NCBI RefSeq assembly: GCF_021869535.1
Contig: NW_026262626.1
Span: 36,890,001 to 36,954,000, forward strand
From: Mytilus californianus
Lineage: Eukaryota
DNA length: 64,000 bases
Reading direction: 5' to 3'
The notes beneath the pieces are model-generated. The model did not search any database. It was not told the origin of the DNA and saw nothing but the letters and a program-made list of their open reading frames with translations. Below are positions 2,754-55,718 of the stretch, one piece after another (positions within the stretch are counted from its first letter, which is position 1; every line of letters starts with the position of its first letter). A program made the translations under genes and the position numbers.

Positions 2754-2853
2754 GTGTGAATGGATAAGAACACTTGTTGTAAAGTTGTTTATTGAAAATG
2801 TATGTACACAGGGCATTGGAGCAGAAATTGTGCCATCTATGAAATTATGGAGT
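2754..2853 (+). CDS. RNF213: RNF213-like in-window exon 1 (CEWIRTLVVKLFIENVCTQGIGAEIVPSMKLWS)
   Basis: tttcattttag / gtaagt; phase 2 to 0. Confidence 0.88.
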
Positions 2854-5800: not shown

Positions 5801-8800
5801 CTCAAAATAGCTACCCGAAAAAAAGCTACCGATGTATAGTTGTCTGTACTATTAACGATTTTCATCATCTGATCAAACCAAGATGGTAATTATTTAACAT
5901 AAGCCAGACTGTTTCATTAAAAATCTTCTAATAAGCGGTCGGTTTTTAGCAAAACTGTCTTGGTTGTGTTTATTGGTTTTCATTTATCAAATGCTGGCGC
6001 AGTATGTAGAATAGCAAATAGTGAAAACATTGCCAACTGTACATGCGTGTCCAATCTATTCCCTTTGCCTCTAGTCGATAAAATTGTTAGTAAATTTCTG
6101 TATGAATTATTTCATTGAGCCAAATATTGTTGATTGCAACTTCGGCGTGTCTTTTGTGTTTAAACCGCCCTTTATTACCTAACCCGTTAAACATGGCTAT
6201 CAAGTGCAGGTGACTGAGTATTTGCCTCTCTCTTTATAACAAACACTTTTGGAACAAATCCTCTGTATGATGTTTATACCTGTATGGACGGATTACCCTT
6301 TTAAAGAGGGATATATTTGTATAGACTGGATTTAAAGTAGAACATGGCAAACGCACATTTTCTACTTATTATAGTAGTAACCTGCAACATCTGATGCATC
6401 AATTGGTGGACTTAATTTGATCTGCAGATGTCTTGTTTACTGCTTAACTGACTGTTTATACAATCTGTTGTTCATCATAATTAAAAGCTATAATGATCAG
6501 ATAAATTCTACTCAGTTATCTACTCAGTAATGCCTCAATGAAAAAAAAAATTATTGTTAGATTTTTAGTTAAGTGCACTAATTGGTACATATGCCATATA
6601 TTGTACTATAGTCATTATAGCTAGAAAATGTCATATTGCCAACTGTGCGCCTCTCCTTGTTGACCTCTTCCTATTTTCATATGAGTCGGAGTTCCTTCAA
6701 TCACTTGTCAAAAACAAGAAGATAAAAGAATCCAGATCATTTTTTATTTTGCAATTATTAGTTTAACCCATCCTCAAAAGCAATATACCAACTCATTCGG
6801 TATTCAAGAGCGTGCAGCGTCTACTCTTACTTAGAAAAACGTCACCAGCGTATGAACAGAGTTTTAATGAATCAAGGGTATATCAAAGAACGTCTTGTCC
6901 TTTCTAAATAAAGTTCATGGGAATATACAAAGACTTCGTTGACTCCTTCTCATGTATTTTATGATGGTATGAATTTTACCCTTCAGAACCAAAATCGTCA
7001 TAAAAACGTTTCCTGCATGGTTTATCTTTTATACATAAAAAAGAGGTTTATTGTTAAATCTGCAATTGGGTAGGATATTCTGTCCATTGTATTGAATTTG
7101 TTATAGTGTACAGTTGTCAACACAACTCCATCTACATATTTTATCGTATCGTCAGGAAATTTTTATATATTGTTCAATACTACATGTAATATATATTTGA
7201 TTATAGTTCCATTAAATCGACATGGTTCAGTATAAACTCAAGCAGACATAATTAGTTAACGTGCAATATTTTCTTCATTCATATATGTTGATGTTCCGGT
7301 TTGGCTGCTTAAAACTATTATGAACTGATTATCAAAGAAGGATGACTGTTGTTATATCTCCATACTTCCTTTTCTTTTCGGTATTATAGAAGGACTGCAC
7401 TGAAATTTATGTAAATGAATTTTACCTTTTACAAATCTCGTTATGTCCGAGCATTCTTAATAGAAGCACACACCTTAACATTTTGATATCCAAGTATGAA
7501 TAAATATGTAGCAACGTTATAAACTTGGTGGTATTGAGGGACATCAAAAAGATAAAATTAGTTATTTAGTGCGCTAGTAACCTAATACGATTTGTATGCG
7601 AAGCTCGAATCCCATATGGAATTTACTGACCCGATATATATATATAGTATTAGGTCACTGGCAAACAATGTAACGAATATATCAAAGTGATCAAGTCTTC
7701 AATACCGTTAGTTTTAAGAACCTACTTCCATTGGTCTATACAAAAAACAAATGCCAACAATAACAACTTGTCAGCTTTAAAGTTTTCCCCCAATACCGTA
7801 TTGTTTTATAAAGGGACGTAACACCAATACTGTATTGAAATAAGCACTGCCTTCTAACCTAATAGGGTCTCCACGCGGTAGCTTTTTACCTATCATTTTC
7901 CTAGAAGTGTATAAAAGGTAAGATAAGTAGATTTATCTCAATCTTTGATGCAATTCGATATCCTACAAAAGATTATTGCTAGCTTAAATGGTGTTAATAT
8001 CGATTACTTGATGTGAATCTCTTTATACTTTTAAGAATGCCTTTTACATAAATAATTTTGTTTAGGAGTGACGTAGAAAAGTACGAAGATTTTAGGGAAA
8101 GATGTAATGGTTTCTTCATGGAAATTGTTTCACAACTATGTTTTGCCGAGGGAACACTTCCATCTCAAGGAGTCATTGACAAGCTTCTGTCCTATATTGT
8201 TGGAAAAGACAAAAGTGACCGAGGAGAAACTATTGTTTCAAGACAACTGACAGTATTTCAAGATGCTATTGATCCAAACCCTGTGGTCAGATCCTTTTTA
8301 CTGCAGGAGATTATGCAAACAAGGTTGGCGTATAAAATGTATTGTTGTCTAGTAAATCAAACTTATATTTAATAGATATAGGAAGATGTGGTATGAGTGC
8401 CCATGAGACAACTCTCCATCCAAGTCACAATTATAAAAATAAACCATTATAGGTCAAGGTACGGTCTTCAACACCGAGCCTTGGCTCACACCGAACAGCA
8501 AGCTATAAAGGGCCCCAAAAAATTACTAGTGTAAAATACTTTATTATAATCATAATAACGTTCTACTTATTTTAAGGATATAGCCAAGGCTATTACATTA
8601 TCTATGCATACACACAATTTTCTATTTATCTTTGGATTTTTCTTGATTATGACATCCTCTTTTTTATCGAATGCTTGCAAAATACATATACAAAGACGGA
8701 GATGTTTATTTAAATTGCTAATAAAACAACTATCTACCAGACTCCCGGGGCCTCGGTGGCCGAGTGGTCTAAGTAGTTACTACTGTAATCACTAGCCAGT

Positions 8801-11800
8801 CAACACTGAGGTTGTGAGTTCGAACCCCGCTCGTGCGGGTGCACTCGACTCCAATCTTAATTGACTTGGATTGTCAGTTTTCCTATCGAAGGTCGTTGGT
8901 TTTCTCCGGGCACTCCGGCTTCCTCCACCAATCAAAAATGGCCGCCACGAAATAGCCCAAAAGCGGTGCTTAAAAGTGGCGTTAAAACACCAAAAATCAA
9001 AATCAAATACGAGACTCCCCATGACATTGATATTTTCAAATAGATGTCAAAATACGGTATAAAACAGTGATCAAAACTTATACAGTATAGCCATCTATGA
9101 AAAGCCTAGACAGGGCAAAATGTGAAAAAAACTCAAATGAAAACAGTAAACGATATAAGGATTACAGTTTTCGGACTTCTACCATGAACATATAACTTGG
9201 AATAAATGTTTTTTTCGAGCGATAATCACTATCCTAACCTGGGATAGGGTAGAGGTGTAACAGCAGAATAAAAGAACAAACACTAGAAATCAACTGAAAA
9301 GTGTTTCATTCATCAGATCGACATGATGCACATACGAAAATAACAGATCTATGTGTATCCACATTAACCGAAACGTAGTAAGTTCAAAGCAAATGGCATA
9401 TAACATGTATAAGAATAATGTAGCTCCAAGTCGAAAGAACGTACTTAAAATGTGTTTTATATACCGGAATATTGATTAATACATTACTAAATTCTATTCT
9501 ATCTTGTCTACAGATATTTCTAGCTATATATAATAAATATAATGATATGCAAAACATTTATATTTCTATATTGTAATGTTATACCATTACCTCAGGTTAG
9601 GGTGAAGGTTGGCGTCCGTTCAAACGTTTATACCCACTGTATGCGTTTGCACTTGTCCTAAATCAGGAACCTGTTGATCAGTTGTTGTCGTTTGTTGGTG
9701 TGGTTCATAAGTGTTGTTCGTTTCTTGTTTTTTGTATAGACTAGACCGTTGGTTTTCCTGATTGAATGGTTTTAAACTAGTCTTTTTAGGGGACCATTAT
9801 ATATGGCTGTTCGGTGAGAGCCAAGGAGCCGTGTTGAAGGCCGTACTTTGACCTATAATAGTTTACTTTTTACCAATTGTTACTTTGACGGAGAGTTGTC
9901 AGATTGACACTCATACCACATTTTCGTATATCATTTTCATTAAGATAATTAAGTTTTCTGAAATATGATTAGTCTGTCAAGTTGATTTTCTAAATTATAC
10001 ATTTTAAATAAAACTAAGAATAGAGACTTTTGACAATTCTTTTCTTGCAGTGGCAGCGACATTAAATCATATCTGTCAAAGTACTTTGACGACAATACCC
10101 AGCTTCTTCAAACAAGTGTTGGTAGTACGGAATCAATTGAATTATGTTTGCTGATATTGCAATGCATGGAGGTTTGTCATTCAAACATATAAGAAAATGA
10201 TTTAATCTACTTCGTTATACATGTACTTAACACTTTGCCTCATTTTGATTTTGTTATTCTAATCCTATGAAATATATTGCATATTTCGATGCGATAGTTG
10301 CATTATACCTCTGAACTATTTCAAGTTGAAAAAAATATATAATAAAATGCTAAAACTTTGCAAAAAGGAATGTAGTGCTTCGCAGTATAAGAAATAAACC
10401 TCCTTTTAAGGTTTTGTGGGGTTGTTTTTTTTAATTTTTTTTCAGGAATATTTTTTCAGACATTCTCTTATGCATTTTCTACATAAGAAAATGCCTGTAC
10501 TAAGTCAGGCATATGATAATTGTTATCAATTCGTTTGATGTGTTTGAGCTTTTGATTTTGCCATTTGATATCGGACTTTCCGTTTTAAATTTTCTGTATT
10601 TTTATTATTTTATTTTATTTTCGGCTAATTTTATATGGGTTTTAGCTTCAGTTTGGATACTGTCAGTAATATTCTCAAAAGGCAACCTCAAAAAAGAGTA
10701 TTCTACAATCTGAGGGTCATGAAAAATGGACCGTTTAAGTAATATATCACGTTAAATATTTAAACTAACTAACAATTTATTAAATAATGACTATTGCGGT
10801 TGCGTTCGGTTCTGCTTGATAGGAATGACAAGCGATATCGTTAATTCTGTGTGATTAATCTTATTTATTAAAATTGTACATCGACTTTAGATCGAGACAA
10901 ACCCATAAGTTGACAATGAGGCCTTTTCACAATACATCATTCCCCGTAAACCTGCACGACGCACCACAATTCAATTTGAATTATTTGTTTATTCGCACCA
11001 TTTTAAATTACCCACACTGTAAACTATTTCAAATTCAATATATCTTTTATAAAACAAACAAATTTAAAAAATATACAAATTCTGCTCTACCACACACTTC
11101 TTCTCTTAAGCAGACACTGTTACGTATGCACTCCGATCACCATTACACATAAAGAGCGTCACAGATATTGGAGAAACAAAATTTTATACTTCAGTATTGG
11201 AATATGTTCATGTAGTAATAGCTTTTTGTTAAACCCTCCTTAACAGCTACACAGGGACAGTAAAGGCGTTTTAATAATCTACATTTTTAATAATAAGATA
11301 AACCCTTTTATGAATTCACTAGCTGTTCTAGTTTATTTTCAGGATTCAATTCAGCAACAAAATCAAAAGTTTAACAACAGTAAACTTGAATTAGTACACA
11401 TAGAAAAGATGCTGAGTGAATCTGTAGAAGGGTTTTATAGCAACGTACATATTCTGGAAAAAATTGAGTGTATTGCGAAAGCAAAGTACAGTTTGTCAGT
11501 TACAGCAAGATACATACACGATCTATATGGCAAAACACAAGACACAGTTCAACTTGATGCTGAGTTACGTCAACTATTTGAAGCAGCTGGACATCTATGT
11601 GAAAATTCTGGATCCCAATGGCCAAGGTGACTACTTTATCTATTCAAATGCCGATTATCATTTCGAAATTTTTTGTGCAGTCATGGTGTTTTTTGTATAT
11701 TGTCGAGTTATAGTTTTCGTGTATTCCAACTTTTTGTTACTAAGAGGCAACAGAATATGCCGAATTGTAAGCCATATTATACAATGAGAAGAAACAACTC

Positions 11801-14800
11801 CAGATAAAACAATTAAGGAAATTGTGAACTCCAAAAGGTGCAAAACCGGTATGTCGACAGGATAAAAAATCATTATAGATATCATGCTTACAACTTGGTA
11901 TGCCAGACAAGCGTTAAATCTTCAAAGACTCATCGCTGGCGTTGACTCAGAACTAGTATTCAAACCAGCTATTAAAAAGAAACAGCGTAATACAGGTCAA
12001 TTATCATCGGGCATGAAAATTCATATTCAGACAAAATGTCATAAACGATACTAAAATACAATCGATTAATGTAGGGAAAAGATGTCTTTTGAAATTTGCT
12101 TCTGGATACAAAACAAAATGATATATACATGAGTGTTTGTGTGTTTGTGTTTGGGTAAGTTGGTTGCGTTTGTTTGTGTGTGAATATTGCTTCTTTTATA
12201 TTTATGTGTTTAAAAATCAACAAAAATGCGTTTTATTTATAGAAAATATTTCGTGAGAGTATTGTGTCGGAGTTATGGAACAGATGTGTATCAAGCAGTC
12301 CTAGCAAAAAGTGATAGGGAGTATTTGAGATGGGTAATATTACCAGATCTCAATGTAAGTATGAGCAAATCATGTCAAATTGTTAAACTTCAGACATGAT
12401 AACAGTAACTAGTATAGAGCTTACGTGCCGATACATATCAGTAGTCGATTAGACAAAAAGATCTATTTGGTAACACATTGTAATATTCTAATTTATATGA
12501 TTTGCCAGACAGATCCCTAACTGATTTGATAAAATCGTCTGCCTTAACACCAGACAACAGATACTTATGCAAACCGATTTCAATGAATATAATTATGATC
12601 TTTCACATCAATCCACTAGAGCCTCTATAGGATGTATGCATTTATAAAGTTGAATAACAATTCATCATACATCTATTATTAATTGACAAAGGATGGATTC
12701 CTTATAGTAACTTCTGTAAAATACAAGATTTGTTAATTTGATTTAGTTTTTTACTCCGCAAATCACAAATAAGATATACCTTCAATTGAAAAAATAAAAA
12801 TAATATTATAGTTGTACAAATAACAACTAGCTGTGATTTAATCAACAGGTTATGGAGTGTTATGACAGATATATTGTCAACGAAGATTACACGGATATTA
12901 GGCTAGCAGTAGCTGACTCAGTAATTAATCAGAAAGATACACAATTGACAGAGGTTTTTCATGTATGTTTTATTTCTTGTGGTAAAAATTAACCACATGA
13001 ACATTCTGATGGGACATTTTCTAAATCTACCAATTTTTATCATAAAAACCTGAACAAAATAATTCAGATATTAGTACTTTATTACTAGTATTCTGGTTTA
13101 TAAATAAAGGTCAGATAGTAGTATCAACATCTTCGCAACGAGCTTGTTTATGATATTCATGTCTAACGTCATTTAACATTAAATTTATAAAAACTCGGAA
13201 ACCTTTTCAAATAATTCTAAGGAAAGTATGTCAATGCTATGCATAAAGATACATGTATCAAAATAGATATATTATACCCTAACATTCTATCACAGTGGCT
13301 CTCCTAACTTGCCTTCCTTCTTCTGCTGGGAACAAGAAAGGGCATCCTTAAGCCAGGAAAATGTAATACTAAACACAGTAATGGGTCATTTTTTTGATAC
13401 TTGGCGATGGAATATGGTTTAAATTTGTTTATGCCCCTTTTTATCAGAATAAATCTTAATAAAAAGTTACTTTAAACAGCTGTTGAATCATATGTATAAA
13501 TGTTTGCGAGGTAGTCACATATTTTTCGTGTACATTTATTTGGTTACTTGTTAGTTTTTCTCTTTTCAAAGTTTTAACGTAAAAACTAAGTGAGGAATAT
13601 ATGATTTTACATAAAATTTGAACACCATCATTTCAGTCCATGTTGTGTGCATTGAAAAATGTATTTCTACGTTTTTAATACTTCCAGGTCGGTTTCGTTA
13701 CTGATTGACAACAGTCATCGCAAATATAATCTTTGTTTTTATATGTATTGGCAAGATGAAATAATACAGTACTGCAAATTTTGAGGTCCTAATGTATTTT
13801 GTACAGGCAATGTTTCCTGCAGACTTCATTCGTCAGTTTGTCTGAACAGTTATATTTGTTTTTCTTTTTTCTTTTCGTTTTATTTATTATGTTCTTTTAC
13901 AGAAAATATTACAGATTTTGTCTGATTTCAAACTAACGAAATTGCCTTGTACACTGTCCTTCATTTAGATTAGATATGACAACAGATAAACATTTTCGCA
14001 AATAGTTCAACAAAATTGCAAGCAGTTTTTCACCGAACCTATAATCAAACGAAAAATCATTTTCTTATTCCATATATTACTAAATTAACTGTTTGTTTAA
14101 TTTTTCGACCAAAATATTTGCAACACTTACAAGCTATAAGTATATTTGTTTTGACTTGCCATATATATTCACAAATTAAAACTAATAGGGAATAAGTACA
14201 ACGTCACCAAGACAGGAATGCAGTCTTTTAAAAAATAAAACAAATAAATCAACTTCTGCTCGTGATATTAAAAATAAAAGATTGAGTAGCTTAACCCAGT
14301 CGAAACTTGGGAATCAATGCTCATATACCTTTCTTTGCACAGACAAAAGTATGTATGGAATGGCAGTGTAACATTAATCTTCTACTGGCCCTTCACAGGG
14401 AAATCACAATGAACAATCTGCATGATGAGAAATGCAAAATGGAAACAGATAAAACAAATGAAGAACAGGTATTTGTATTTACAGTTGTTCTGCATTCGTT
14501 TATTTCACATAGATTTTCCAATTTCAAAATAAAACCAAACGAGGAAGAAATGTTCCTTTCAAGTAGTGGTACCTTGATCAAAGGTCCAAAACATTTAAAA
14601 GGTGTCCAGAATTTGGTCTATTAATCTATCATTTTAAGTTCTAAAATCAAAACTTGACAAAATTTAGAACTTCATGAAATTATAAATTTACCTTGAGAGA
14701 AAACAGGAAATTATGCTTTGGAAACACACAGAAGTTAATGAACACACACATGCAGAAATATTCTTTAGAGGTAACAGATGTGGTTCTCTCCTAAAAAAAA

Positions 14801-17800
14801 CATGGTTAATAAAAATTTTGTTGTAAACTTCACCTCTTTCTTAATAATGCTATAATGTTTTAATGTACAGTAAAAATTGTACTGTTAATGAAATCAAGTT
14901 TTCTTTCTGGCTTTGAATTGAAAAATAAATATTAATTAGTGAATTGGTGATGATGATACATTATTGGAGAGTTTTAAGTTCTTTATTTGCAAATGTTGAC
15001 GAGTTATATACCTAAGTCCTATGGAATGACCATTGATAAAAAACAGCATATTTCGATATATTTTATATTTCGTGTGCATTAATGCTTTAATCTTGTTGGT
15101 TGTTATCATATCGGTTTCACATTCTACTTTTTAGGAAAATGAGTTCATTACTGACTATCTGCAGACACGTTCGTTTTTACCAAGAGAGGTAATATAGAAA
15201 GAAAAAAGAATATTAAATTTAAGCTAACATTTACCATCATATTCTGAATCTATTTACTATGACTTAACATGCTTCGGCTTTAATCATAGTTAATATTTTT
15301 TTATCATTATCAATATAGAGGAAATCAGTATCATGGACAATCAAAATCATTATGCGGAGAAATAACAACATAATCAATTCATACATGACATGATGTGGCG
15401 TCCGTCCTGTTTCTCGCAAATGTTCAAATCTGATGCTAATACTCTTTCGGTAAATTCACAATAGAGTAATTAGGAAATGGTTGTGGTTATGACAAGTGGG
15501 ACAAATTCGTTGTTCTCTCTGACACAACCACAGTCATTTATGGCGGTCAAATACATCATGTTGTTGTCTTTAAATAATATCTTAAATAGCAAACCCAAAT
15601 TTAGAACCAAGAGAAAGGGAGACAATATTTTTTCAATGCAGGACGAAAATATATATTGTGATTGCAATTTAATGCGTTTTTTACATAAATAAAGATCTTT
15701 CATTTCACTTGAAATCGTATTTGCTCATTTTTTATGCTTATTTACTTACTAATCTATTTCGATTTCTTCTTTGATTCTTTTGGCAGAAAGAAGTATCATT
15801 GTCTATTTTGAAAAACGATGTTTGGCAGCCAGAAACCGCCAGAAATATTCACCTTAATATGGACATTGCACAACAAAATCTTACCTGCTTACTTACTCAT
15901 TATATGGTTATGATGACCTTTATTCCAGGAAGTACAACGTTATTGATGCCTTTAAAAAATATAGCATTAAATATCGGTTGTATGAAGGTACGCACATTGA
16001 AATATTCACATATTCGAAAAATGAACATTCACTTTGTATAATGAAAGTTTCTATTTTGTTATGCATTGTTATAAAGTAACGAGTTGGGTTCCGAGAGTTT
16101 TTTAATGTGAATACACCCACACTGGTAAAGTACGTAACTGTTAAAAAGACAAGGGTTTAAATATTTCGCAAAATATCGAAATTATATAGAAAAATGAAAA
16201 TTTTACTTCATCACAACAATATTTCACTTATAAGTGTGCAACAACATTATGAGGAATAAAAGTTATTTATATTTACTGTAACAGTCCGTTATCCAGGTAT
16301 GTTTGTTAGCAAAATGCCTTAAACTGCATTATCCTGAATTGCATCCGTCTGAAAATGTTAAAAATAATATGTTTGATAAAATTTCAATCATTTATTATTT
16401 GTACTTCATTTCTTTCAACTCATTATTCGATAAATATTAAATCTTAGTTGCTTGTATATCAATGTCTTCCACTTCCTTATTAATTTGACTTTCCAACTTA
16501 TACGTCTTGTACAGGAAGTCATAACGTCTTGTGTTTTTAGCCATTTGATCTTATGAGCCTCATCTGGTATTATGTATTCAGAGAATAATAAATACATTTG
16601 TATATCTCGATTGACTGTTTGCTCTATGATGTCGCACTAGATGTAGATATAACGTCAATGTAAGACAGAAATGATGAAAAGGGCATGATACACGCAGGTT
16701 GTTTTTATGTGGACAAAATAGGCATGACAATAATATATTTTGGATTGATATAGAATTATGATATAATACTAGTAAATCATTTTGGTTACGTGTTAGTTGT
16801 TTAAATGAAAATTACAAGTTATTATTTTCTCCATTAGGATTCCTACTACCCATCTATGCCGGATGATGTAATTGCATTCTTTACAAGAGTCATGCGAGAT
16901 CATAATAAGGAACATAGCGTGAAATCACAGTGGGGAGATGAAGACGTCCCGACAATATACAGTGAGTTTACAACTACGCTGATATTGAGTATCAGTAACA
17001 ATGCCTGTGTTTTTAATTATAAAACAAAATAATTTTTTTCTTCGATATCTTTATTCTTTGCATTTAAGTTAATACATTGCATGTAACATTTATCAACGTA
17101 GCTAATAATGCAATTTATGAATAAGTGGAAAGAATCTTTGCACAAGAAGTTGATCATAATAAAGAAATTTCACTCTGATGATTCAATGATTTTGAAGACC
17201 ATTTCTTATCTGACAATTCATTAAATATTTGATTCTTTGTTTACGATTTTTTTTATCGACACATATTTGTTTCGCTTTTTTTTTCTTTTTTTTTTTTTGA
17301 CAAACAGGCCAACTTTGTCGATTTTGACGCAAATAAACTAGACTCCAAACTAGAATCCATGATTAACTGTTGACAAATTAAATGTGTTTGTGTCTAAACT
17401 TACAATCGACATGTATTAGCTGTGTTTATATATTTATCTATCACGATAGTCTTCTGATCTGTTTATTAATCGATTACGTCTATTCATGATTGTGACTCTG
17501 TTGATGCACCGGTCTTCCCTTTTTTGAGTTCATGCAAGCCCCTCAGTTTTTTTTTTATCTTGAGCGTTATTGTCTTAATATATCAGTGTGACAACAATGG
17601 TGACCTGAAAAAGAATACAAATAAGTGTTATGTTTTCTCTTTTTTTCATTAAAACTAGTACGTGTTTGATTCCTTATTTGACTGAACCCACAAGATTCGC
17701 ATCTGTATTTTCGTTACAAACATGAAATATCGATTTGATTTTGATTTGATTTTTGGTGTTTTAACTCCACTTTTAAGCACCGCTTTTGGGCTATTTCGTG

Positions 17801-20800
17801 GCTGCCAGTTTTTATTGGTGGAGGAAGCCGGAGTGCCCGGAGAAAACCACCGACCTTCGATAGGAAAACTGACAATCCTAGTCAATTAAGATTGGAGTCG
17901 AGTGCACCCGCACGAGCGGGGATCGAACTCACAACCTCAATGTTGACTGGCTAGTATACAGTAGTAACTACTTAAATCACTCGGCCACCAAGGCCCCATA
18001 TGAAATATCGAATAATATTTTTTTTTATTATTGACATTTTATGAACAAACATTGTAAGGGAATTGTTGTGAAATAAAAAAATGTCTTCATCCACATCTCT
18101 GAGTCCTTGTTAGGGTTTTGCTTTACTTTCTGCCTTTTTTCATATCGTATTTACTTTTCTAGTATTTTATCATTTTAAAATATTAATTTACACGAGCATC
18201 ACTCACAAGACAAATTGATACTGTTCATGATATAATATTTGCTTTGGTAAAGCCTTTGAACAACATGAATATAATTTCATGAAGTGGTTAAAGTTATTAC
18301 TTAAGGTGGTACCTAACACTACAGGGAGATAACTCTGATAAATCAGCTAAACGTTTTAATCACGTTGTATTGTTAAGGAAATATTAAGCTCCTCAATGAT
18401 CAAAATGAGCATTTGTCAAACTGCTATGTATCCAATGAAATTTTTCCGAGAAAGTGATTGGTTCAAGTTTTTTGAAATTTTTATATTTTTTCAAAGGGTT
18501 AAAGTAAATATTTTCAAAATTTCAAAATTTTATGAAAATTAAACGAGCCAACTTAATTTTAGTCAAGGTGTTGGGTACTACTAGTACCTTAAATTAAAAA
18601 AAATGTAGTGGAAGTAAGATTTAAACAAAAGATTAATTAAAAGTTGTATATCACGAACAGGTTTTCACGGTTATCCAAATGTAATGAAGTTTAGGAATGG
18701 TCCTTCAAATCTATCAACCTTGGCTTATAAAACTTAAAGATTGAAGTTTTGATTATATTTAAAGCATTGTATTTTCAATTACGTTTGCAATTTCTTTTTT
18801 AACACAAGTTCTCCTGTTATAAAAGTAAATAGCAGAAATGCAATGTACAATGATTTTTGTTGATATTTCTTAAAAAAGAATAATGTAAAGTTTGGATATT
18901 TCATAATATTGCGTTGCGTTTTATATCAACTGTGCTGTTTATGACTTTGTTGTTATGCCAACAGCTTCTATTATGCAGTCCCATCGATATAAGGATTTAA
19001 GATACACAATTTCTTTCTGTTTTTTTTTATCATATCTTGTTGAGTTCTTCGGGCATTTGGGGGAGTCTGTTTTGAAAAAGGACTCTTTAAATCTCCAATT
19101 AAATTTAATAAAACGTTTTGAAGCTAAATGCGATTAAGAGCTCGACATATTGTAAAGACCATATGGTGACCATAGATGTATTTAAGTATTAATTGTATTT
19201 TCGACTCGTTGATGTTAATCCCACCCATTTTTTTAGTACTTTGTACATGATTATCAAAAGTCAACGATGTTAAGACTAGTTCATAACTAACTATGTGAAA
19301 ACGTTGCACATGATCATTTGTCGGCTTGATTTCACCTTGTGACCAGAGACAGGACTTTCAAATGTTCATTATAAAAGTTGCTTAGCTAGAAGGCTTATTT
19401 GTAACATGAAACCCTTCATTATTGTTTTCGCGTTTTGAGCTGAAAGAAAAGCAAAGTGTTGTCTATGAGTAAATTGGAGTATTTTATTAAATCGTTTATG
19501 GAACAAATGACGCAATAGATCGAGTTTTTCTTTGTCCTTATCTTACAGATTTGTTATGGATTTGTATTTCTTGACCAAAATATCTTCCTTAGATTTGACG
19601 ATTATTGAATTTATCAAATTTGCATGTATTTCCAAACAGACAAAGATAAACATGTCAGTGTTTAGTAATCAGACCTTGTTGTACCTCTTTTCCATATATA
19701 GAATATGAGAAGATTCAAATTTGCAAGCTGACGACAACACCAAACAATGTTACAAAAATCATATGAAAGGGCAATAACTTTAAACAAACCAATTCAAACC
19801 AATTTGATTTAAAACCCACTATCAAACCGCCACAAAATCTGATGAATGTAAGCAAGTTCGAAGGGAAAACTGTCTGGTTCACTGATGACAACATAAAAAT
19901 GTTCACTGATATAAACCTTATCTGGAAGCAGATATTATATTACCGACAAACATATTATGACGGTGTGTATATCTGATCAATTATTATTATGTGGTCAGAA
20001 CCGCGGATGGGTCTTCCTATCTATTCCATAAAGTCACACAGCGACGCAAAAATGTCTGAACGTTACGTTAAATCGTGCGAATCTAGTATTTCTGTCATAA
20101 TAAAGAAATTTCACTCTGATGCTACAAGGATTTTGAAGACCGTTTCTAATCTGGCAATTCATTAAATTTTGATTCTTTGTTTTTTAGATTTTTTTTATAT
20201 CATCATATATTTGTTTCGCGTTGAATCGTGCGAATCCAGTATTACTGTCACCGTACTATTCTTGTCAGTTTGTTTTCGATTTATAAGTATACATGTTCCT
20301 ACGGTATCTTTTGCCTCCATTTTTCTGTTAGACAATAATATTTTCCGGTAAATGCATCTACCTTTTGCTAAATGGCAATTAAACTTGAAACTTGAAACTT
20401 AGCCATTCTTTACAGAGAGCACTATATATTCACAAGAGCCATTTAGACGAGTAATGAGTCACTATTATTTTCTGTACCATACATTCATGATCCACTACGG
20501 TAACTTTCAAATTAACGGCTCTCGGTAGTACGTGAGAGTGCAATTAACATGTTATATACATAACGTTATATTTTGAGGGATCATGCATTAGTGTTATTTT
20601 CGTTTTTGAAGATATTTGTAAGAAACTAGGTATCACCAGAATTACCATATTTTGATGTCGATGTCACAAAATGAAAATAAGGTGCATTTCTTTGTATTAT
20701 CAAACTGTTTTGTCTGATAAAAAAAATGTCTTACCACAAAAACTTGAAATCAGTTCATGTGTATATTGGAGGGGAAATTATACGTGCACATATAAGGTAA

Positions 20801-23800
20801 TCGAAGGAATATCTACTGATATCTAGTAAAAAAAAAACATTAGAAATTCGCTCAAGACGTTTTACTTTGAACAACATTTCATGTATGTTTATATGTGCAA
20901 ATTTATTTTCTAGAATGCCCACAAGGTCACCCTTATACCATTGGGGACGTAAGTATATTATTGTATTGAAGTAGTGTATGGTACCTCTATGTGATTTAAA
21001 TTCTGGAACATATGCTTTTTGGGCAGCCAAATATAAATGTTAAATGGCTACTTTTAATATGTTTTCCGCCTGTGTACCCATAACAGCTTGCAAATGAAAA
21101 CGACTTGTACCTTTTTCCTGTGTTATCAGTCTAACGAAATGAATAATTGATTTTTCATTCTTCTGCAAAGAAGTCGGCAACTTCGACCATTGCAAGATTC
21201 CCACTTTAACATAAATAGGAAAAATGTGTATGAATTGTAGTTTTCGTTCAATATGATTAGTAATTGTCTTGATATAATTGTCATGCCATAGTCTCAACAT
21301 CACGTATATGGTATCTCATGGAACTACGTCCGTACCTGGTTTGCCTTATCTGTTTAGAATAGCTATGTTTGGTAGATATATGTTTATTGTCCCTGAGGCG
21401 CAGGAGTTGCGGCTGACATAGAAGTCTCCCGTATGTTCTTCTCGTAAGCATTCTCGCATATTTTGTCAAATATTTATGAAAAATATATCAAATAAAATTG
21501 AGAATGGAAATGTGGAATGTGTCAAAAAGACAACAACCCGACCAAAGAGCAGAAAACAACATAAAGCCACCAATGGGTCTTCAACACAGCGAGAAAATCC
21601 CGCACCCGGAGGCGTGCTTCAGCTAGCCCCTTAACAAAATGTGTACTTGTTCATTGATAATGGACGTCATGATAAACTCCGAAATGTATAAACCAACTAA
21701 AATTAAAAATCATACAGGATTAACAAAGGCCAGAGGCTCCTGACTTGTGACAAATGTATGTATCAGCAATGTCTGGACAAGTTCAAAAATCAGTTCTCAA
21801 CAACTATTAATAGGTTTTATGCCTCTTGAAAAATAAAAATCAATTTGAAAATTGCATTTAAGCGCTGTCAAGTCTACATTTCTTGTAGGATTGTAATGCA
21901 ATTTATAAAGAAGTGTTATATTAAAAATGTCTGGAACAAAATCGAAATCAGCGCTGATCATTTATTGAAACAAATGTTTTATACCTTAGAAATGTAAATT
22001 TAAAAGCTAATTACATTGTGAACGCTCTCAAGTGAACAATGCCTGTCATACATTTCGGACAAATTCGAAAAATCAGTGCCAAATAACTTTTGAGAAACGA
22101 TCTGTGACCTTGGAATACATATGTATGGGAAATAAAATTGCTAACTATCATTGCATGCCTACAATTCCTGTAAAATAACCATTGAAAATTAAAAAAACAA
22201 ACAAAAACAAAAAACAAAAAAAAATAAATTCTAGTAAATCCCCATGGTAGATAAACAATACGTAACACATTTGACATTGGAACCCTCTCATTGGTTACTT
22301 TATTTTGTATTGCTTCATTTACACGTTGAGAGTGCCATTATAAGAAAAAAAGAAACGTAGAATAACAATATGCCACCCCAACTCCGTTGAGGGTGCCATA
22401 ATAATATCTTCAAAATATTTTTATGTTTATTCATGTTAATACTGATTATATGAGAAGGAATGGGTTTTTGTCAATCTTTTATTGCTTATTATGTAAGCGT
22501 ACGAAATGCAATATTAGTTAGATTCAGCAATCTTATTTACCTTACTTTCTCTGCACTTGGAATACCATTGGCTAAAATCGTATACTTGGGAACCATTTAT
22601 ATATAAAATTCGCATTCACAAAAATTTTAATATGTACAAAGCTAACTAATAGACGATATTTGTTCTTCAACCCTAATATATATATACATTTCCAATAACT
22701 CAGTTATAACTTTTATTTTATACCAAAATCAATAAAAAGTTGCATTAAGGACTTTTTCTATTATTAGTGTGGAAAGGCTTATTTTGAATATACGTGTTTT
22801 TGTGGAGAAAAGATCGGAGGAAAAAGCCACATTTTACTGACAACAAACAAACAGGCATCAAGGTAAATTTGGCATTGTATTAAAAACAAAGAAAATGTAT
22901 CAATTCACCTTTTTTAAAAGTTAATTCAGAAAAACTTGTGAAGTTTAAGAAACTCTAACTTTAATATGATTATGTTGTCGACTGTTATTTCTTTTAATTT
23001 TATTTGTGTTTCTTATATTATTTAAATCATTGAAAAGATCATGCATATACTACGTCTTAGGAGCCAAACAGTATGTAATCTCATCCTGTATGAACTGTTT
23101 TACACTAGTCATGTTGGGGTCCTTTATAGCTTGCTGTTCGATGTGAGTCAAGGCTTTGTGTTGAAGGCCGTACTTTGAGCTATAATGACCTTTTACAAAT
23201 TGTGACTTGGATGAAGAGTTGTCTCAATGGAATTCATACCACATCTTCTCATATCTATCAACATGATTGATATGCTTTCACATTAAAGTTCTTCAAGTGA
23301 ACAATGATATGTTTAGAGTTGATTTGAATTATTGTATATCAATACAAAGGTTTAGATAAAGAATTTCATTTTGAAACCCTAAAAAGTACAGTGTGGAGCA
23401 AATCTTTGGTAGCGATCATACCGATTGACTTACACATGATGTTATAGGACATGTTTCTTAATCTTAAAAGTGTGTACTTTTTGTGAATACATGTAGTTGT
23501 TTATCTTTTCCTTATTTTTTGTTTGACTTTGGTATTGTGTTTTTTCGAGTTATATGTTAAAAATGCATATTTTGAATGTCATCTCATTTGTTTATGGCAG
23601 TTGACCAATCTTGCCTTTATTACCTTTTCATGAAAATGCGGGTTTTTTTGTCAACTCTACCCTGTTCTAGTCATTCTAATGGTTTTTTTATTACATTTGT
23701 TGTATTCTGTTGGCTGCTGGGTGCCAATTATTATTAAATAAACCTATTCTGTCTATTTGGGTTGCTTTCCAAATTTTATCAATATAACGAAACTATAAAC

Positions 23801-26800
23801 AAGTGTCATACGATTGGGTTGTTTAGATAGTTTTTCAACCCATAATGTTTTTTGGAAATGTCTGAACAAAATCGGGATTATGGCAGTTGTTTTTCACTGG
23901 TTATGTTGATTGATAGCTATTGATGTTTTCAATTTTGCTGGAATTTTCTTTTTTGAATCATACTTGGAGTCGGTATTTTTGTTAAACTTTTTTTTATATA
24001 TAAATGAAAATATCGTATCTGATTTGTTCATTGTGTTTATTACTATAGAATGGTACTTTTTTGCTACTTTTTAGTTTTTTGCTTGTTTTTTGTTGAGGGC
24101 TCTCATCTTTTAAGTTAGAATGTTAATTGATACTCCATGAAGATACAATTTAGATAACATTTTGATAAAATACTACACAATACAATTTGTTTACAAAAAC
24201 ATATATGCAAATAGATCGAAGTAACTATAGTTTATATTTTCATATATTTGTATGTCTATATAGCGAGGCTGCCGCAAAAGGACACATTCTTGGTAGAGCT
24301 AACAGTCTGAAAGCAACAGATATTGTTACACCTAGAAACAATCTGAGCAGAGGTTCATTTGCAATTATTCGACTGTTGACACACATGTCAATGTTCATTG
24401 CAGCAAACTCTAACGTCCAGGTATAAAGTAAAATCTGTATTATATTTTATTGCTATCAGCGTAGTACAATTTAGAAAGTGAGATAATACAATTATAGGTC
24501 CAATGCAAAAGTTATTAATGTTAAACGCATGCGAAATCGGAAAGAACGTTTTTATCACAATCATCCATATAAGAAGTTTGAAACGATTTAACAATTTCGC
24601 CACAAAAATTCGAATATAACTATTGTTCAAAGACTATCATCTTTTTTCCAAGATTTATATATCTTTAATATTGGCAATAATGTTTTCAAAAACAAAATAT
24701 GGTGAAATATGGAATTTTTATTATCATGATTATATTAACATGATTAAAGTGTAACTAAAATTGAAAGATAAGACGCGTAATATTCCCAAAGATAAAACCA
24801 GTGCTGTAATAAGTGAAAATTATAAGGAAATTGATTATTTACACATTTGTTAAAGTTTTCAAAAGTTTGTTGTCTTATATATTTTTATGTAGTTTATTTT
24901 TATTTTTATGGCACTTCTCAGTAAAAGTGGGTCTTTTTCATTGCCAAATGTCATTCAAAATTCTACATATGACTCTTTCGGTGATGAGTATTCCTGGTTT
25001 GACAATGTAAACTAAGAACTCAATATATTACACGAGACAATGTTAACAGCCATTTATTATCATCATCCATTGTCAAAATAATGCTTCTTTCATTTTAATA
25101 CTTGTGTATTACATATCAATATTTGGTCTACACTTCAGTTTTGAATGAATCGTTATATTTTGTTTGTATTTTGATAATATTTTCGATTTTATTTATGTGG
25201 TTGCAGTACTTATGTATATTGTTATCTTTTAATTTGACAAATATTACCACGTGCTGATCATCTTATTTGCAGGCAGTACAGCAGATTATTAAAACAGAGC
25301 CAGATATACAGGAAACGGAAGTGTTTCAGTTCTTATTGGAACATATTAATTTAGATATTGAGTCACTTCATCAAATCTTAGGAAAAGGAAAAGATGACAT
25401 TTTTCTTATGATACATTTTATACTCAACGATATTGTAATGATGCATACATCAGCTGCGATAGGTGAACATTTACAATTAAAAATTTTGTTTTTATAGTTG
25501 TTGCAACAAAACCTTCGATCTCAAACTGACTTGAAATATGTTTCCAATTTTTCTGTTACATGCTATACTTTTTAAAAATATGATAACGAAAATACCGAAT
25601 TCCATGAAAAATTCAAAACGGAAAGTCCCTTATCCAATGGCAAAATCAAATGCTTAGGCACTACAATAGAATGGAAAACAACGATCATATTCCTGAATTG
25701 GTATATGCATTTCCTTATGGGGAAAATTTTGAATTAAACCAGGTGTTATAGCTAGCTAAAGATCGCTCTATATGACAGTCGCATAAAATTCCTTTTTGAT
25801 GAAATCAATGTGGAACAAAACAAACAGAATTTAATAGGTATAAATGTAAAAAAAAATTGGATACAGCAGTCAACATTGTGCCATTTATCTTAATCAATAT
25901 TAAAACGAATAAATATGTCAACAAAGAAACAAATGGCATATAGACAAAGCACATACGCAAAAAAGAAAGACATAACATTACCACATCACAACAACACATT
26001 GGGGGGATGAATAAGTACTGGTGTCTTCACTTTACTTTACTGCCATGGTATATTGAACCTCCTACTATAGACCTCTCATTTAAACATTCTAGCTATGTTT
26101 AACTCCTGTACATAGCAATAATAGTCCAATAAGTAGTTTGTATGTATTTAACATGCTGAAAAAGATGTTTTAAAATTTTTACTTAGCCATGGTGTTTTGA
26201 CCCCCCTGCCATGGTATATTAAACCCCCTTACTATATGCCTCTAATTTTAAAAATTCTAGCTATTCTAACTCCTTTATATAGTAATAATACTCCAATTAT
26301 TAGTTTATATGTATTTAACAGGCTGGAAAAGCTGTTTTGAAATTTTTACTTATCCATGGTATTTTGAGCCCCCTGCCATAGTATATTGAACCCCCTACTA
26401 TAGGCCTCTAATTTCAAAAATTCTATCTATTCTAACTCCTATATAAAGTAGAAAATACTCTAATTAGTAATTTGTATGTACCTTGCCATGGTATATTGAA
26501 CCCCCTACTATAGACCTCTAATTAAAAAAATTCTAGCTATTCTAACTCCTTTGCATAGTAATAATACTCCTCTAGGAAGTTTATATGTATTCAGCATGCT
26601 GGAAAAGATATTTTGAAAATTTTACTTAGCAATGGTATTTTGACCCCCCTGCCATGGTATATTAAATCCCTACTATAGACATCTAATGAAAAAAATCTAG
26701 CTATTATAACTCCTCAATATAGTAATAATATTCCAATAAGTAGTTTGTTTGTATTTAACATGCTGGAAAAGATGTTTTGAAAATTTTACCTAGCTGTGGT

Positions 26801-28917
26801 ATTTAAACCCCTCCTACCATGGTATATTGAACCCCCTACTAAATACCTCTAATTTCAAAAATCTAGCTAATCTTTTTCCTAAAAATAGTAATAATACTCC
26901 AATTAGTAGTTTGTATGTATTTAACATGCTGAAAAAGATGTTTTGAAAATTTTACATAGCCATGATATTTTGACCCCCCCCCCCCCCTGCCATGATATAT
27001 TGAACCCCCCAACTATAGACCTCTAATTTCAAAAATTCTAGCTATTCTAACTCCTTTATATAGTAATAATACTCCAATTAGTAGTTTCTATGTATTTAAC
27101 AGGCTGGAAAAGCTGTTTTGAAATTTTTATTTATCCATGGTATTTTTACCCCCCTGCAATGGTATATTGAACCCCCTACTATAGACCTCTAATTTCAAAA
27201 TATTCTTGCTATTCTAACTCCTATTGAAAGTAAAAATACTCCAATTAGTAGATTGTTTGTATTTAACATGCTGGACAATATGTGTTATGAAAATTTTACT
27301 TAGCCATGGTATTTTAACCCCCCTGCCATGATATATTGAACCTCCTATTACAGACCTCTAATTTCAAAAATTCTAGCTATTCTAACTCCTTTATAAGGTA
27401 ATAATGCTCCAATTAGTAGTTTATATGTATTTAACTGGCTGGAAAAGATGTTTTGAAATTTTTACTAATCCATGGTATTTTGACCCCTGCCATGGTATAT
27501 TGAACCTCTTACTATAGACCTCCAATTTAAAATTGTACTTTAGATAATCTGCTATACTATTTATCTAAAACAGGCGGGATTCAATTTTCCATGGTGGGAT
27601 TCAAAATACTATATGGGAAAAATGACCCCGGGGTCAAAATACCATGCGGTATAATGACCCCGGGGTCAATTTTCCATACGGTATTTTGACCCCGGGTTCA
27701 CTTTTCAGGGGGTTCAAAATATCATATGACACCGGGCTACGCCAAAAGGGAATTACCACAAAATGAACTAAACAGTAAAGGTTAATAATTCACAAAAATA
27801 AGCAAAATAACACTTTTACACGTAATTTAGATGATAAACAACGTCAGTACATAGAATATATACTTCAAGATCATCATGTTTTATTTTATGAAGTTGATGC
27901 AGAATATTTATCAACAAGGTCTTGGTATCTTCCGATGAACGTTTTTAAACAATTACAAGATTTTCTATAACATAACCCTGGTTCATTGACTTTCTGTTCA
28001 GTTTAAAAAGTAAAATCACAAAAATACTGAACTCCGAGGAAAATTCAAAAAGGAAAGTCCCTAATCAAATGGCAAAACCTAAAGCTCAAACAAATCAAAC
28101 GAATGGATAACAACTATCATATTCCTGACTTGGTACAGGCATTTTCTTATGTAGAACACTTCTCTTTGCAATAACTTGCAATGAATTGATGAACACCGAT
28201 GGTTTTATTAAATAAAATATCCATGAGTTATGTAGTGAATATGTTCTATCTATATTTGTATAAAATTTCAGGAGAAAATAATCCTGACGAATTGTGCAAA
28301 TTGAGCACCGAAAAAAGCCGATGTGAATGGGAGGATTTATTTGACCAGAAATTCATTTTTCCTGTGTTGCAGGTAATGTGCATATTATTTTGCCATTTCT
28401 GTAATACATAAATTAGCATTTTTCCTATTTTTAGAAATGAGGTTTGATTGCCAATAAGACAACTATTCACTAAAGTTAAATTGACGTGGATAAAAGAAAC
28501 TAGATAACCTAGGGAAGAGCACAACTTTAAAATAAAATAAAAAAGATAAGATTTAAAAGGTTTAGATCGGTACGAAGCACAAACAAACTAAGATATAAAC
28601 AATAGACGCAAATCACTTTACAAGAGTGCTCACAGTTACTAAAAGCTACTTCAAAGCCATAAACAACAAATGAATAGATCGTGTGCACCCAGATTGACGA
28701 ATCAATCAGTGAAACGCCTAGCTGATTTAGTATAAGACGATATGAACAGTCTTAGAAAGGCATTTAAAATTGGGTTAAATTTTATTGGTTGCTAGATCTG
28801 CGAAGAGAAAACAAGATTTATTAAGATATTTTACATAACAAATATACATGATAACAATGAAATAGTTCGTTTAATTATGGATATATATATATATATTGTT
28901 GGGCTGTTATTTAGACG

Positions 28918-28975
<58 letters not shown>

Positions 28976-29987
28976 ATAAAAAGTCCTTGGTACAGAAAGT
29001 ATAGTTTAAAAATAAAAAAACACAAAAGATCTCATTATAAATCGAACATTGTTTCTGTTAGCACTTTCACCGCATCTCCTACGGTTCACCAGACAGAATT
29101 GTTATCGTTAATAGTAACGACTTGTGACGTTACCTAATAGTAACGTCTTGCACTAGTTTGTATATATTACGGAATCATATTCACGGACCGAATTTCACTT
29201 CCTATTTAAAGTCGGATTGTACAGTTCAATAAAATAGTGTTCCTTGGCTTCACGCGGAATTTTATCTTTCTATCTTAAAAAAGGAATATATTTCAAATTT
29301 TCCCTTTCCACATTTGTCAAAGAGTTCAGAACATGGAGAATTCCTAATTGACGGGTCCTTTATCTGCTGTTTGTGAACTCTAACTCTATCAATTAGTCGA
29401 TAAGGTAACGTCACAAGTCGTTACTATTAACGATAACAATTTTGTCTGACGAACCGCTAACAGAAACAATGTTCGATTTATAATGTAATTTTTTGTGTTT
29501 TTTATTTTTAAACTATATATATATTATATTTGCCTTCCGGTTTAATTGATCCGTTCATCCTATTTTGACTCTTCAAAATTCAAGAGTCTATCCTAAATTG
29601 AGGTAAATTATGTGGCCTTCCAATAACCTTTTCGATTCCTAACATCACTGAAGAAACATTAATTGTCGAAATCCGGATATGGTGTACAAAAAATCTTTGC
29701 ACCTTTGTTTGCGGTATACCATCTTTGCCGCAAGTTTATTGTTTTATGTTTGGTATTAAATTTATAGTTAAGATCCATTTATTACACCTTGTGATCCGTT
29801 TATTTGGCAATCGCCAATGGCAGTTAGCAGGGTTTTAGAACATTTGTTGTTCGACTTGTTAGTCAAATGCGTTTTGTTAAAATATACTTTTTCACTTTTT
29901 TGGAAAATGTTTGTGCTGTATTTAGATCCCTCTAACAAGAAATTTGTTTTGCATGCACACGTGTGAACGTTGTTTTCAATTGAGACT

Positions 29988-30061
<74 letters not shown>

Positions 30062-55457: not shown

Positions 55458-55718
55458 ATTGGTTGGCTGATTGATTGATTGATTGTTTGATCTTTGAAGC
55501 AACTTTTAGCACTATTGTTCTATTTCGTAGCGGTCAGTTTTTATTAATAGAGGAAGCCGGAGAGCCCGGATATAGCCACCGATATTCTGTAGGAAAAAAT
55601 AACAATCCTAGTAAATTAAGATGCAGTCGAGCGCACCTGTCAGGTGCAGGATTCAAACTCATAACCTCAGTGTTGACAGGCTAGTTCGACTACTTAGACC
55701 ACTCTGCCACCGAGAAGC
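55458..55718 (-). mobile_element. Diverged SINE copy
   Basis: (ATTG)n tail, GAGGAAGCCGGAGAGCCCGG core, reverse tRNA-like head CTTAGACCACTCTGCCACCGAG. Confidence 0.8.

What the first reader, a model, noticed from the sequence alone, without database searches (positions are those of the whole stretch)
16838..22862. Intact but variant RZ finger hidden in a 35-nt microexon
Seen in sequence: joining exons 12-14 gives MPDD-(31 aa)-KCPQGHPYTIGD/CGKAYFEYTCFCGEKIGGKSH, so both halves are invisible to the ORF track. Established knowledge: in human RNF213 the RZ finger (H4509 needed for ubiquitylation of bacterial LPS; C4516/H4537 proposed catalytic pair) works by a RING-independent transthiolation route. 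Every equivalent position is present here. Two differences from the human sequence as I recall it: the distal Zn-ligand pair is C-x-C rather than C-x2-C, and the MPDD-to-finger linker is about 14 aa longer (contains RDHNKEHSVKSQWGDED). Inference: a bivalve paralogue with a working non-protein-substrate E3 centre and possibly altered substrate or E2 access.
Basis: partly seen in the sequence, partly recalled or inferred. Interest (0 to 1): 0.7.

Follow-up and report, generated by a model that had tools for sequence, protein, structure and literature searches.

The report
Mussel RNF213 RZ finger, CxC variant
The three small exons do encode an intact, transcribed RZ-type zinc finger of a mussel (Mytilus) RNF213 gene, but the gene model is already in RefSeq, the 35-base microexon is an ancient feature of RNF213 genes, and its two oddities (CxC spacing, long hinge) are natural variants seen elsewhere in the family.

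Summary
Exons 16838-16961, 20914-20948 (35 nt) and 22768-22862 have AG/GT borders. Spliced, they score 61.8 bits on Pfam ZnF_RZ-type (cutoff 27). Transcript contigs from three samples carry both junctions.

The gene is a Mytilus californianus RNF213-alpha-like gene. RefSeq protein XP_052087598.1 (P0227) maps to window 2752-45776. All five RefSeq protein sequences retrieved (isoforms X1-X6) already contain the microexon, so it is not hidden from annotation.

The same 35-nt, same-phase microexon is present in a limpet and a teleost RNF213 gene, so it is ancestral. Skipping it would frameshift to a stop.

Both differences from mammals are real:
- **CxC for CxxC:** a one-residue deletion in the distal zinc pair.
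- **Longer linker:** 36 residues from the MPxD motif to the first Cys, against 22 in mouse.

Neither difference is unique:
- Among 132 other RNF213-family fingers surveyed, 114 are CxxC, 14 CxC and 4 Cx4C. A tree forces at least 7 changes of the CxC state.
- Bivalve linkers run 26-33 residues. This one is simply the longest.

The variant is fixed in four Mytilus species with all six Cys/His kept. AlphaFold gives the same strand pattern as a CxxC paralogue. It is most likely an active finger. Altered specificity is untested.

The parts
2752..45776 (+). C-terminal part (residues 4069-5397 of the 5397-aa isoform X5) of a Mytilus californianus RNF213-alpha-like gene: RING, E3 shell, RZ finger, CTD
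   Evidence: tblastn of P0227 (XP_052087598.1) to the window gives 26 collinear pieces, with exon cores 98-100% identical. Mouse RNF213 matches exon 8061-8342 at E 3e-12.
5576..5755 (+). RING-finger exon of the same gene
   Evidence: ORF 5579-5773 has a C-x2-C...C-x-H-x2-C-x2-C...C-x2-C pattern. P0227 residues 4136-4195 map here at 98%.
16838..16961 (+). Exon encoding the conserved P-x-M-P-D-D motif, the predicted N-terminal helix of the RZ domain, and the long hinge; it ends in phase 1
   Evidence: P0227 residues 4619-4659 are 100% identical. AlphaFold places a helix at P0227 4626-4643. Joint 16961>20914 is seen in three runs.
20914..20948 (+). 35-nt microexon (phase 1 to 0) encoding K-CPQGHPYTIGD: first Zn ligand Cys at 20916-20918 and Zn ligand His at 20928-20930
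   Evidence: The same 35-nt exon is at L001:70789-70823 (Lottia) and L002:28903-28937 (Cyprinodon). Skipping it gives a stop after 6 codons.
22768..22862 (+). Exon encoding the proposed catalytic Cys (22768-22770), the distal Zn pair as C-F-C (22795-22797 and 22801-22803), the IGG motif and the proposed general-base His (22828-22830)
   Evidence: P0227 residues 4672-4702 are 100% identical.
24264..24420 (+). Next exon, with the near-invariant GHILG motif and the RLLTH segment that follow the finger
   Evidence: Near-invariant columns G100, H101, L103 and G104 in alignment A1.

Best explanation
These three exons encode the RZ (RNF213-ZNFX1) finger of one member of the Mytilus-specific expansion of RNF213 genes. 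It is a real, transcribed and already annotated domain. It most likely works like the canonical finger. One Zn ion, held by Cys-His and by the distal Cys pair, stabilises a small beta-sandwich. A Cys/His pair at the other end takes ubiquitin from an E2 by transthiolation and passes it on. A preceding helix holds the donor ubiquitin. Two lineage-specific changes arose after this gene split from its closest Mytilus paralogues: a one-residue deletion that turns the distal CxxC knuckle into CxC, and a lengthened hinge between helix and sandwich. Both are fixed across the four Mytilus species sampled (M. californianus, M. coruscus, M. edulis, M. trossulus). Shown here: the exon structure, transcription, domain identity, conservation, and the recurrence of CxC elsewhere. 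Inferred: Zn binding, E3 activity, and any substrate.
For: - Splice structure and junction-spanning transcript contigs in three samples.
- Pfam PF20173 at 61.8 bits against a cutoff of 27.
- Alignment to mouse RNF213 across the E3 shell, finger and CTD at E 8e-15, with all six Cys/His aligned.
- Exact identity to RefSeq XP_052087598.1.
- Orthologues in M. edulis, M. trossulus and M. coruscus keep CxC, the 36-residue linker and all six Cys/His, while nearby residues vary.
- In alignment A1 of 46 family members the four Cys are invariant and the Zn-ligand His is nearly invariant.
- With the finger masked, the four Mytilus CxC genes form a 100-supported clade. It is sister (99) to the CxxC paralogues P0199, P0205 and P0207.
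- CxC occurs in 14 of 132 other fingers, with at least 7 changes forced by well-supported branches. A single origin of the bivalve CxC genes is rejected (AU p 3e-51). The knuckle therefore tolerates this spacing repeatedly.
- AlphaFold2 gives pLDDT 81-88 over the finger, with the same four strands as the CxxC paralogue control (88-92).
- The nearest predicted shapes in the ESM Atlas are PF20173 clusters.
- Roles of the residues and of the helix come from PMC11549300 and bioRxiv 10.1101/2025.10.14.682297.
Against: - There is no biochemical evidence for Zn binding or ligase activity in any CxC finger.
- Foldseek found no significant PDB match. The human RZ domain is only partly resolved.
- The gene sits on a long stem branch (0.64 changes per column), which could mean relaxed constraint or a changed function.
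- The one raw-read RNA run (X9) showed almost no expression.
- The runs with spliced contigs are labelled RNA only by guess. A GT..AG-spliced form is, however, hard to explain otherwise.
Confidence: 0.8

Rival explanations
1. Neofunctionalised finger. The CxC knuckle, the 9-residue-longer hinge and the aromatic-rich helix give this paralogue a different E2 preference, reach or substrate from other RNF213 copies.
For: - Long stem branch after duplication (0.64).
- The longest linker of 133 fingers surveyed: 36 against at most 33.
- AlphaFold hinge of 13 residues against 4 in the sister paralogue.
- The helix is reported to bind donor ubiquitin, and E2 preference differs between the RNF213 and ZNFX1 fingers.
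- The variant is conserved in four species.
Against: - Nothing here measures specificity.
- CxC and hinge length vary continuously and repeatedly across the family, which fits neutral tolerance as well.
- The hinge is described as flexible in the human protein.
Confidence: 0.2
2. Catalytically dead or purely structural finger. The shortened knuckle weakens Zn binding and the domain persists only as a scaffold.
For: - Lower pLDDT than the control.
- Many bivalve paralogues have already lost the proposed general-base His to Tyr (17 of 68). Not every RZ finger in these expansions need therefore be canonical.
Against: - All six Cys/His are kept in four Mytilus species while neighbouring residues change.
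- This copy keeps His where others have Tyr.
- CxC copies arose independently and persist in clams, amphioxus and alligators.
Confidence: 0.1
3. Regulated microexon. Inclusion or skipping of the 35-nt exon switches between a full-length ligase and a truncated protein lacking the finger and the CTD.
For: Skipping would frameshift to a stop after 6 codons. Microexons are often regulated in animals (general knowledge).
Against: - Every junction-bearing contig includes it, and no 16961>22768 joint was reported in four runs.
- All five RefSeq protein sequences retrieved (isoforms X1-X6) include it.
- Contigs drop rare forms, so absence of a skipped form is weak evidence.
Confidence: 0.05

Closest known systems
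RZ finger of mammalian RNF213 (human C4505/H4509/C4525/C4528 Zn site, C4516/H4537 catalytic pair; mouse chains 6tax, 7oik; human 8s24)
   Same: It occupies the same position in the protein, between the E3 shell and the CTD. It has the same P-T-M-P-E/D-D motif and helix before it, and the same spacings C-x3-H-x6-C-x8-C and C-x8-H. All six Cys/His are present. It is encoded with the same 35-nt microexon as in a teleost RNF213.
   Different: The distal pair is C-x-C, not C-x2-C. The linker from MPxD to the first Cys is 36 residues against 22 in mouse. Sequence identity is only about 30-35% over the domain region. Activity is untested.
Closest Mytilus paralogues (P0199, P0205 M. californianus; P0207 M. 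edulis)
   Same: They belong to the same Mytilus-specific gene expansion and share the architecture and the YK-CP-x-GH start. They are about 41-42% identical over the 116-residue region.
   Different: They have the canonical CxxC and linkers of 27-28 residues. The AlphaFold hinge is 4 residues against 13.
Other natural CxC RZ fingers (Mercenaria mercenaria P0178/P0179/P0183/P0184/P0191/P0200/P0234, Ruditapes P0206, Branchiostoma P0066/P0071, Alligator P0130/P0223, unnamed P0127, P0213)
   Same: They carry the same one-residue-shorter distal knuckle followed by G-x-x-I/V-G-G.
   Different: They have independent origins. Their linkers are 22-33 residues. Some have also lost the final His (Tyr in Branchiostoma and Ruditapes). 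The alligator copies replace the first C-x3-H with C-x-C-G-Q.
RZ finger of ZNFX1 (C1849/H1853/C1869/C1872; C1860/H1881)
   Same: It is the same Pfam family and has the same ligand order and an N-terminal ubiquitin-binding helix. Atlas row 2 (AAA_12 + PF20173 cluster) aligns 80 residues at TM 0.50.
   Different: The host protein is a helicase rather than a dynein-like AAA E3. The reported helix residue I1835 is 14 residues before the first Cys, a much shorter hinge.

Membership tests
RZ-type zinc finger (Pfam PF20173) | Score above the family's gathering threshold | tested here: met
   61.8 bits against 27, E 4.6e-17, profile positions 10-53 of 54. PF20173 is precomputed for P0227.
RZ-type zinc finger (Pfam PF20173) | Four Zn ligands in the order Cys, His, Cys, Cys at the aligned columns | tested here: met
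   C4661, H4665, C4681 and C4683 align to the invariant or near-invariant columns. The last pair is spaced CxC instead of CxxC.
RZ-type zinc finger (Pfam PF20173) | Canonical C-x2-C spacing of the distal pair | tested here: not met
   There is a one-residue gap in the alignments to mouse RNF213 and to the profile. Spacing is not strictly defining: 14 CxC and 4 Cx4C among 132 other family fingers.
RZ-type zinc finger (Pfam PF20173) | Proposed catalytic Cys and general-base His | tested here: met
   C4672 is in an invariant column. H4692 is present, whereas 17 of 68 bivalve fingers have Tyr there.
RZ-type zinc finger (Pfam PF20173) | Beta-sandwich preceded by a hinged helix | tested here: inconclusive
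   AlphaFold gives helix 17-34 and strands 48-51, 57-60, 69-71 and 77-81, as in the CxxC control. The nearest Atlas shapes are PF20173 clusters at TM 0.42-0.52. There is no significant PDB match.
RZ-type zinc finger (Pfam PF20173) | Zn binding and RING-independent transthiolation activity | not testable with these tools
   This needs protein biochemistry.
RNF213 family | RING, E3 shell, RZ finger and CTD in this order, homologous to mammalian RNF213 | tested here: met
   Mouse RNF213 matches at E 3e-12 (E3-shell exon) and 8e-15 (finger region). The RING exon is at 5576-5755. Collinear tblastn with 4,000-5,600-residue bivalve RNF213 proteins.
RNF213 family | Dynein-like ring of six AAA+ modules | not tested
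   It lies upstream of the window. P0227 is 5397 residues long, but its N-terminal part was not analysed here.

The most novel reading that the evidence does not exclude
The Mytilus CxC/long-hinge RNF213 copy is a neofunctionalised ligase. Its shortened zinc knuckle and extended hinge change E2 choice or reach, and so the class of non-protein substrate it marks. More broadly, the repeated natural changes in the family amount to a natural mutational scan that constrains the RZ mechanism: CxC at least 7 times, Cx4C, and His-to-Tyr at the proposed general base in a quarter of bivalve copies.
Probability: 0.15. Interest if true: 0.55.

Novelty: new member of a known kind. Interest (0 to 1): 0.25.

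Why it matters
The RZ finger is the active centre that lets RNF213 ubiquitylate bacterial lipopolysaccharide, and its mechanism is still being worked out. This particular finger is an ordinary, already annotated member of the family, so the finding itself changes little.

The survey made to judge it is more useful. It shows three things about natural RNF213 genes:
- They tolerate one, two or four residues between the distal zinc ligands.
- They vary the helix-to-finger hinge from about 19 to 36 residues.
- They often replace the proposed general-base His with Tyr.

All of this occurs within large bivalve gene expansions that have been linked to immunity and symbiosis (PMC9993606, PMC7430831). 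These variants are ready-made test cases for what the RZ mechanism really requires. The conserved 35-nt microexon is also a practical warning for gene prediction in this family, because missing it truncates the protein.

Tried and rejected
- **Word-based protein search.** The 84-residue spliced peptide found nothing. This is a length-filter effect and says nothing about relatives.
- **HMMER representative search.** An E3-shell exon from the window, followed by two region searches on full-length relatives, gave the comparison set and finally the window's own RefSeq protein.
- **Foldseek against the PDB.** It gave only weak zinc-ribbon-like hits (RbpA, ribosomal S27e-type proteins). This is uninformative, because the RZ domain is a small, partly resolved piece of a 5,000-residue chain.
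- **Raw RNA run X9.** It had about 0.4x depth on exon 12 and no junction reads, so it could not be used for or against. Expression level and tissue therefore remain unknown.
- **Otten et al. 2021 (PMC7610904).** The paper is not held. Residue roles were taken from PMC11549300 and the ZNFX1 preprint instead.
- **Independent origins.** I considered that CxC might be a shared ancestral bivalve state. The tree and the AU test reject this. The group was named after the first tree was seen, but the likelihood difference is 468 units.
- **Sequencing or assembly error.** I considered that the CxC might be an error. It is rejected because three other species' gene models show it. In addition, the transcript contigs lie on exon 14 with no differing letters.
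- **Zinc-site geometry.** Ligand distances in the models could not be measured, because coordinates are not returned.
Full report
**1. What is in the sequence**

On the + strand, three segments are each flanked by AG and GT: 16838-16961, 20914-20948 and 22768-22862. Joined, they read through in one frame.
- a P-S-M-P-D-D motif;
- 31 further residues;
- K-CPQGHPYTIGD from the 35-nt exon;
- CGKAYFEYTCFCGEKIGGKSH from the third exon.

The mechanical ORF list shows only the first of these, reading on into the intron.

**2. Is it a real domain and a real transcript?**

The spliced peptide matches Pfam ZnF_RZ-type (PF20173) at 61.8 bits against a curated cutoff of 27. It also matches mouse RNF213 chains in the PDB.

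A longer query taken from the matching RefSeq protein aligns to mouse RNF213 from the E3 shell through the finger into the CTD at E 8e-15.

Reads and contigs were laid on window 16870-22865.
- Runs X1, X2 and X3 (one study, three samples) each hold a long contig: 4.5, 3.8 and 10.4 kb, at depth 16-22.
- Each contig jumps 16961>20914 and 20948>22768 with GT..AG ends and exactly 35 letters between. The microexon is therefore in the mature transcript.
- These runs are labelled RNA only by guess, but spliced contigs are themselves the sign of cDNA.
- The one raw-read RNA-seq run (X9) had almost no depth on the exons and tells nothing either way.
- No contig or read showed the skip junction. Skipping would frameshift to a stop six codons on.

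**3. Whose gene it is**

A HMMER search with the E3-shell exon 8061-8342, followed by two region searches, recovered the family.

P0227, RefSeq XP_052087598.1, is 'E3 ubiquitin-protein ligase rnf213-alpha-like isoform X5 [Mytilus californianus]'. It maps collinearly to window 2752-45776 as residues 4069-5397. Exon cores are 98-100% identical, and the finger exons are exact.

All five RefSeq protein sequences retrieved for this gene (isoforms X1-X6) contain the microexon-encoded residues. PF20173 is already recorded for the protein. The finger is therefore not hidden from current annotation.

In P0227 numbering:
- the Zn ligands are C4661, H4665, C4681 and C4683;
- the proposed nucleophile is C4672;
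- the proposed general base is H4692.

The roles come from PMC11549300 and from the ZNFX1 preprint 10.1101/2025.10.14.682297. The preprint also reports that the helix before the finger binds the donor ubiquitin.

**4. The microexon is ancestral**

I fetched the genomic loci of a limpet RNF213 (Lottia gigantea, L001) and a teleost one (Cyprinodon variegatus, L002).

Both have a 35-nt exon with AG/GT borders at the same place and phase (L001:70789-70823, L002:28903-28937). It encodes the residue before the first Cys through the G-D/E that precedes the catalytic Cys. Splicing them reproduces the annotated proteins exactly.

The exon structure therefore predates the protostome-deuterostome split. 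It is not a peculiarity of this gene.

**5. How unusual are the two differences?**

I collected 132 other RNF213-family RZ fingers from the three searches. The sample is not random and contains some near-duplicates.

Spacing of the distal pair:

| Spacing | Count | Where |
|---|---|---|
| CxxC | 114 | most of the family |
| CxC | 14 | seven Mercenaria copies, one Ruditapes, Branchiostoma, two Alligator species, two unnamed eukaryotic sequences |
| Cx4C | 4 | a Mytilus paralogue clade and one other |

Linker from the M of MPxD to the first Cys:

| Group | Residues |
|---|---|
| Vertebrates | 20-26 (mouse 22) |
| Bivalves | 26-33 |
| This gene | 36 |

However, a long linker is the bivalve norm, and this copy is merely the extreme. 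CxC is a recurrent minority state.

**6. History of the variant**

Three orthologues sit in the same 90% cluster: M. edulis P0260, M. trossulus P0265 and M. coruscus P0266. All have the same C-F-C, the same 36-residue linker and all six Cys/His. Several neighbouring residues differ.

I built a tree of 126 family members from about 740 flanking columns, with the finger itself masked.
- The four genes form a 100-supported clade on a long stem (0.64 changes per column).
- That clade is sister, at 99, to the Mytilus CxxC paralogues P0199, P0205 and P0207.
- It lies inside a Mytilus-specific expansion.
- Well-supported branches force at least 7 changes of the CxC state across the family.

An IQ-TREE analysis of 42 bivalve rows gave the same placement. 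An AU test rejected a single clade of Mytilus plus venerid CxC genes (likelihood difference 468, p 3e-51).

The deletion therefore arose once in this lineage, after the duplication and before these four Mytilus species diverged, and has been kept since. That is what a working, tolerated variant would look like. It does not look like decay.

**7. Structure prediction**

AlphaFold2 was run on P0227 4610-4725 with a 46-row alignment. As a control, the same region of the CxxC sister paralogue P0205 was run with the same rows.

| Feature | This gene (CxC) | P0205 control (CxxC) |
|---|---|---|
| pLDDT over the finger | 81-88 | 88-92 |
| Helix | 17-34 | 27-43 |
| Strands | 48-51, 57-60, 69-71, 77-81 | 48-51, 57-60, 69-71, 78-82 |
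| Hinge, helix to first strand | 13 residues | 4 residues |

The fold is predicted to be the same. The last strand shifts by the one deleted residue, and the extra residues lie in the hinge.

Foldseek found nothing significant in the PDB. A shape search of the ESM Atlas put PF20173 clusters first, at TM 0.42-0.52.

**8. Reading**

Best explanation (confidence 0.8 overall):
- It is about 0.95 likely that this is a genuine, expressed RZ finger of an RNF213 paralogue.
- It is about 0.65 likely that it is catalytically competent.
- On this view it is a canonical-type RZ finger carrying two tolerated, lineage-fixed length changes.

The other readings:
The long stem, the longest hinge and a divergent, aromatic-rich helix all fit it. 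It rests on no direct evidence (0.2).
- A dead finger (0.1) and a regulated microexon switch (0.05) are less likely.

**9. Novelty and score**

The gene, its domain and its exon are already in public annotation. The domain family and its mechanism are described.

I found no paper that discusses the spacing or hinge variation. Two full-text searches on RNF213 in bivalves and in Mytilus turned up only expression and gene-family-expansion reports.

I file it as a new member of a known kind, of low to moderate interest. The family-wide variation noted in passing is the part worth a specialist's attention.

The scan's earlier notes on this window (a hammerhead-like motif and a satellite in introns) do not bear on this finding.

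Noticed in passing
Family survey (proteins P0011-P0259), not window coordinates: At the position of the proposed general-base His (human H4537), 17 of 68 bivalve RZ fingers and several other invertebrate ones have Tyr. A few have other residues. The window's gene keeps His.
   Followed up: partly
P0180, P0181, P0186 (Mytilus edulis, galloprovincialis, coruscus) and P0220: A different Mytilus RNF213 paralogue clade has the distal zinc pair spaced Cx4C (C-K-A-Q-N-C). The knuckle therefore varies in both directions within one genus.
   Followed up: partly
L001:70789-70823 (Lottia gigantea); L002:28903-28937 (Cyprinodon variegatus): The same 35-nt, phase 1-to-0 microexon encodes the first half of the RZ finger in a gastropod and a teleost RNF213 gene.
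   Followed up: yes
window 17670-18069, 18270-18669, 21470-21669, 22270-22469: Intron segments have very high summed contig depth in the RNA-like runs (thousands) and many differing letters, loose ends and odd joints. They look like dispersed repeats transcribed from many copies elsewhere, not part of this mRNA.
   Followed up: no
window 8792-9062, 17655-17889, 55475-55684: Short ORFs share a near-identical peptide (…FPIEGRWFSPGTPASSTN…) on either strand at three places. One overlaps the high-depth intron segment. This is probably one repeat family.
   Followed up: no
window 16870-16961: The transcript contigs of X1, X2 and X3 each differ from the window by one letter within exon 12. This is presumably a polymorphism. 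The position and coding effect are not given by the tool (table 8).
   Followed up: no
window 57585-57947 (+): A 120-residue ORF downstream of the RNF213 gene has a Cys pattern reminiscent of a PAN/Apple-type module (…CGQECLLTAECTSINY…NLCD…). It is possibly an exon of a neighbouring gene.
   Followed up: no
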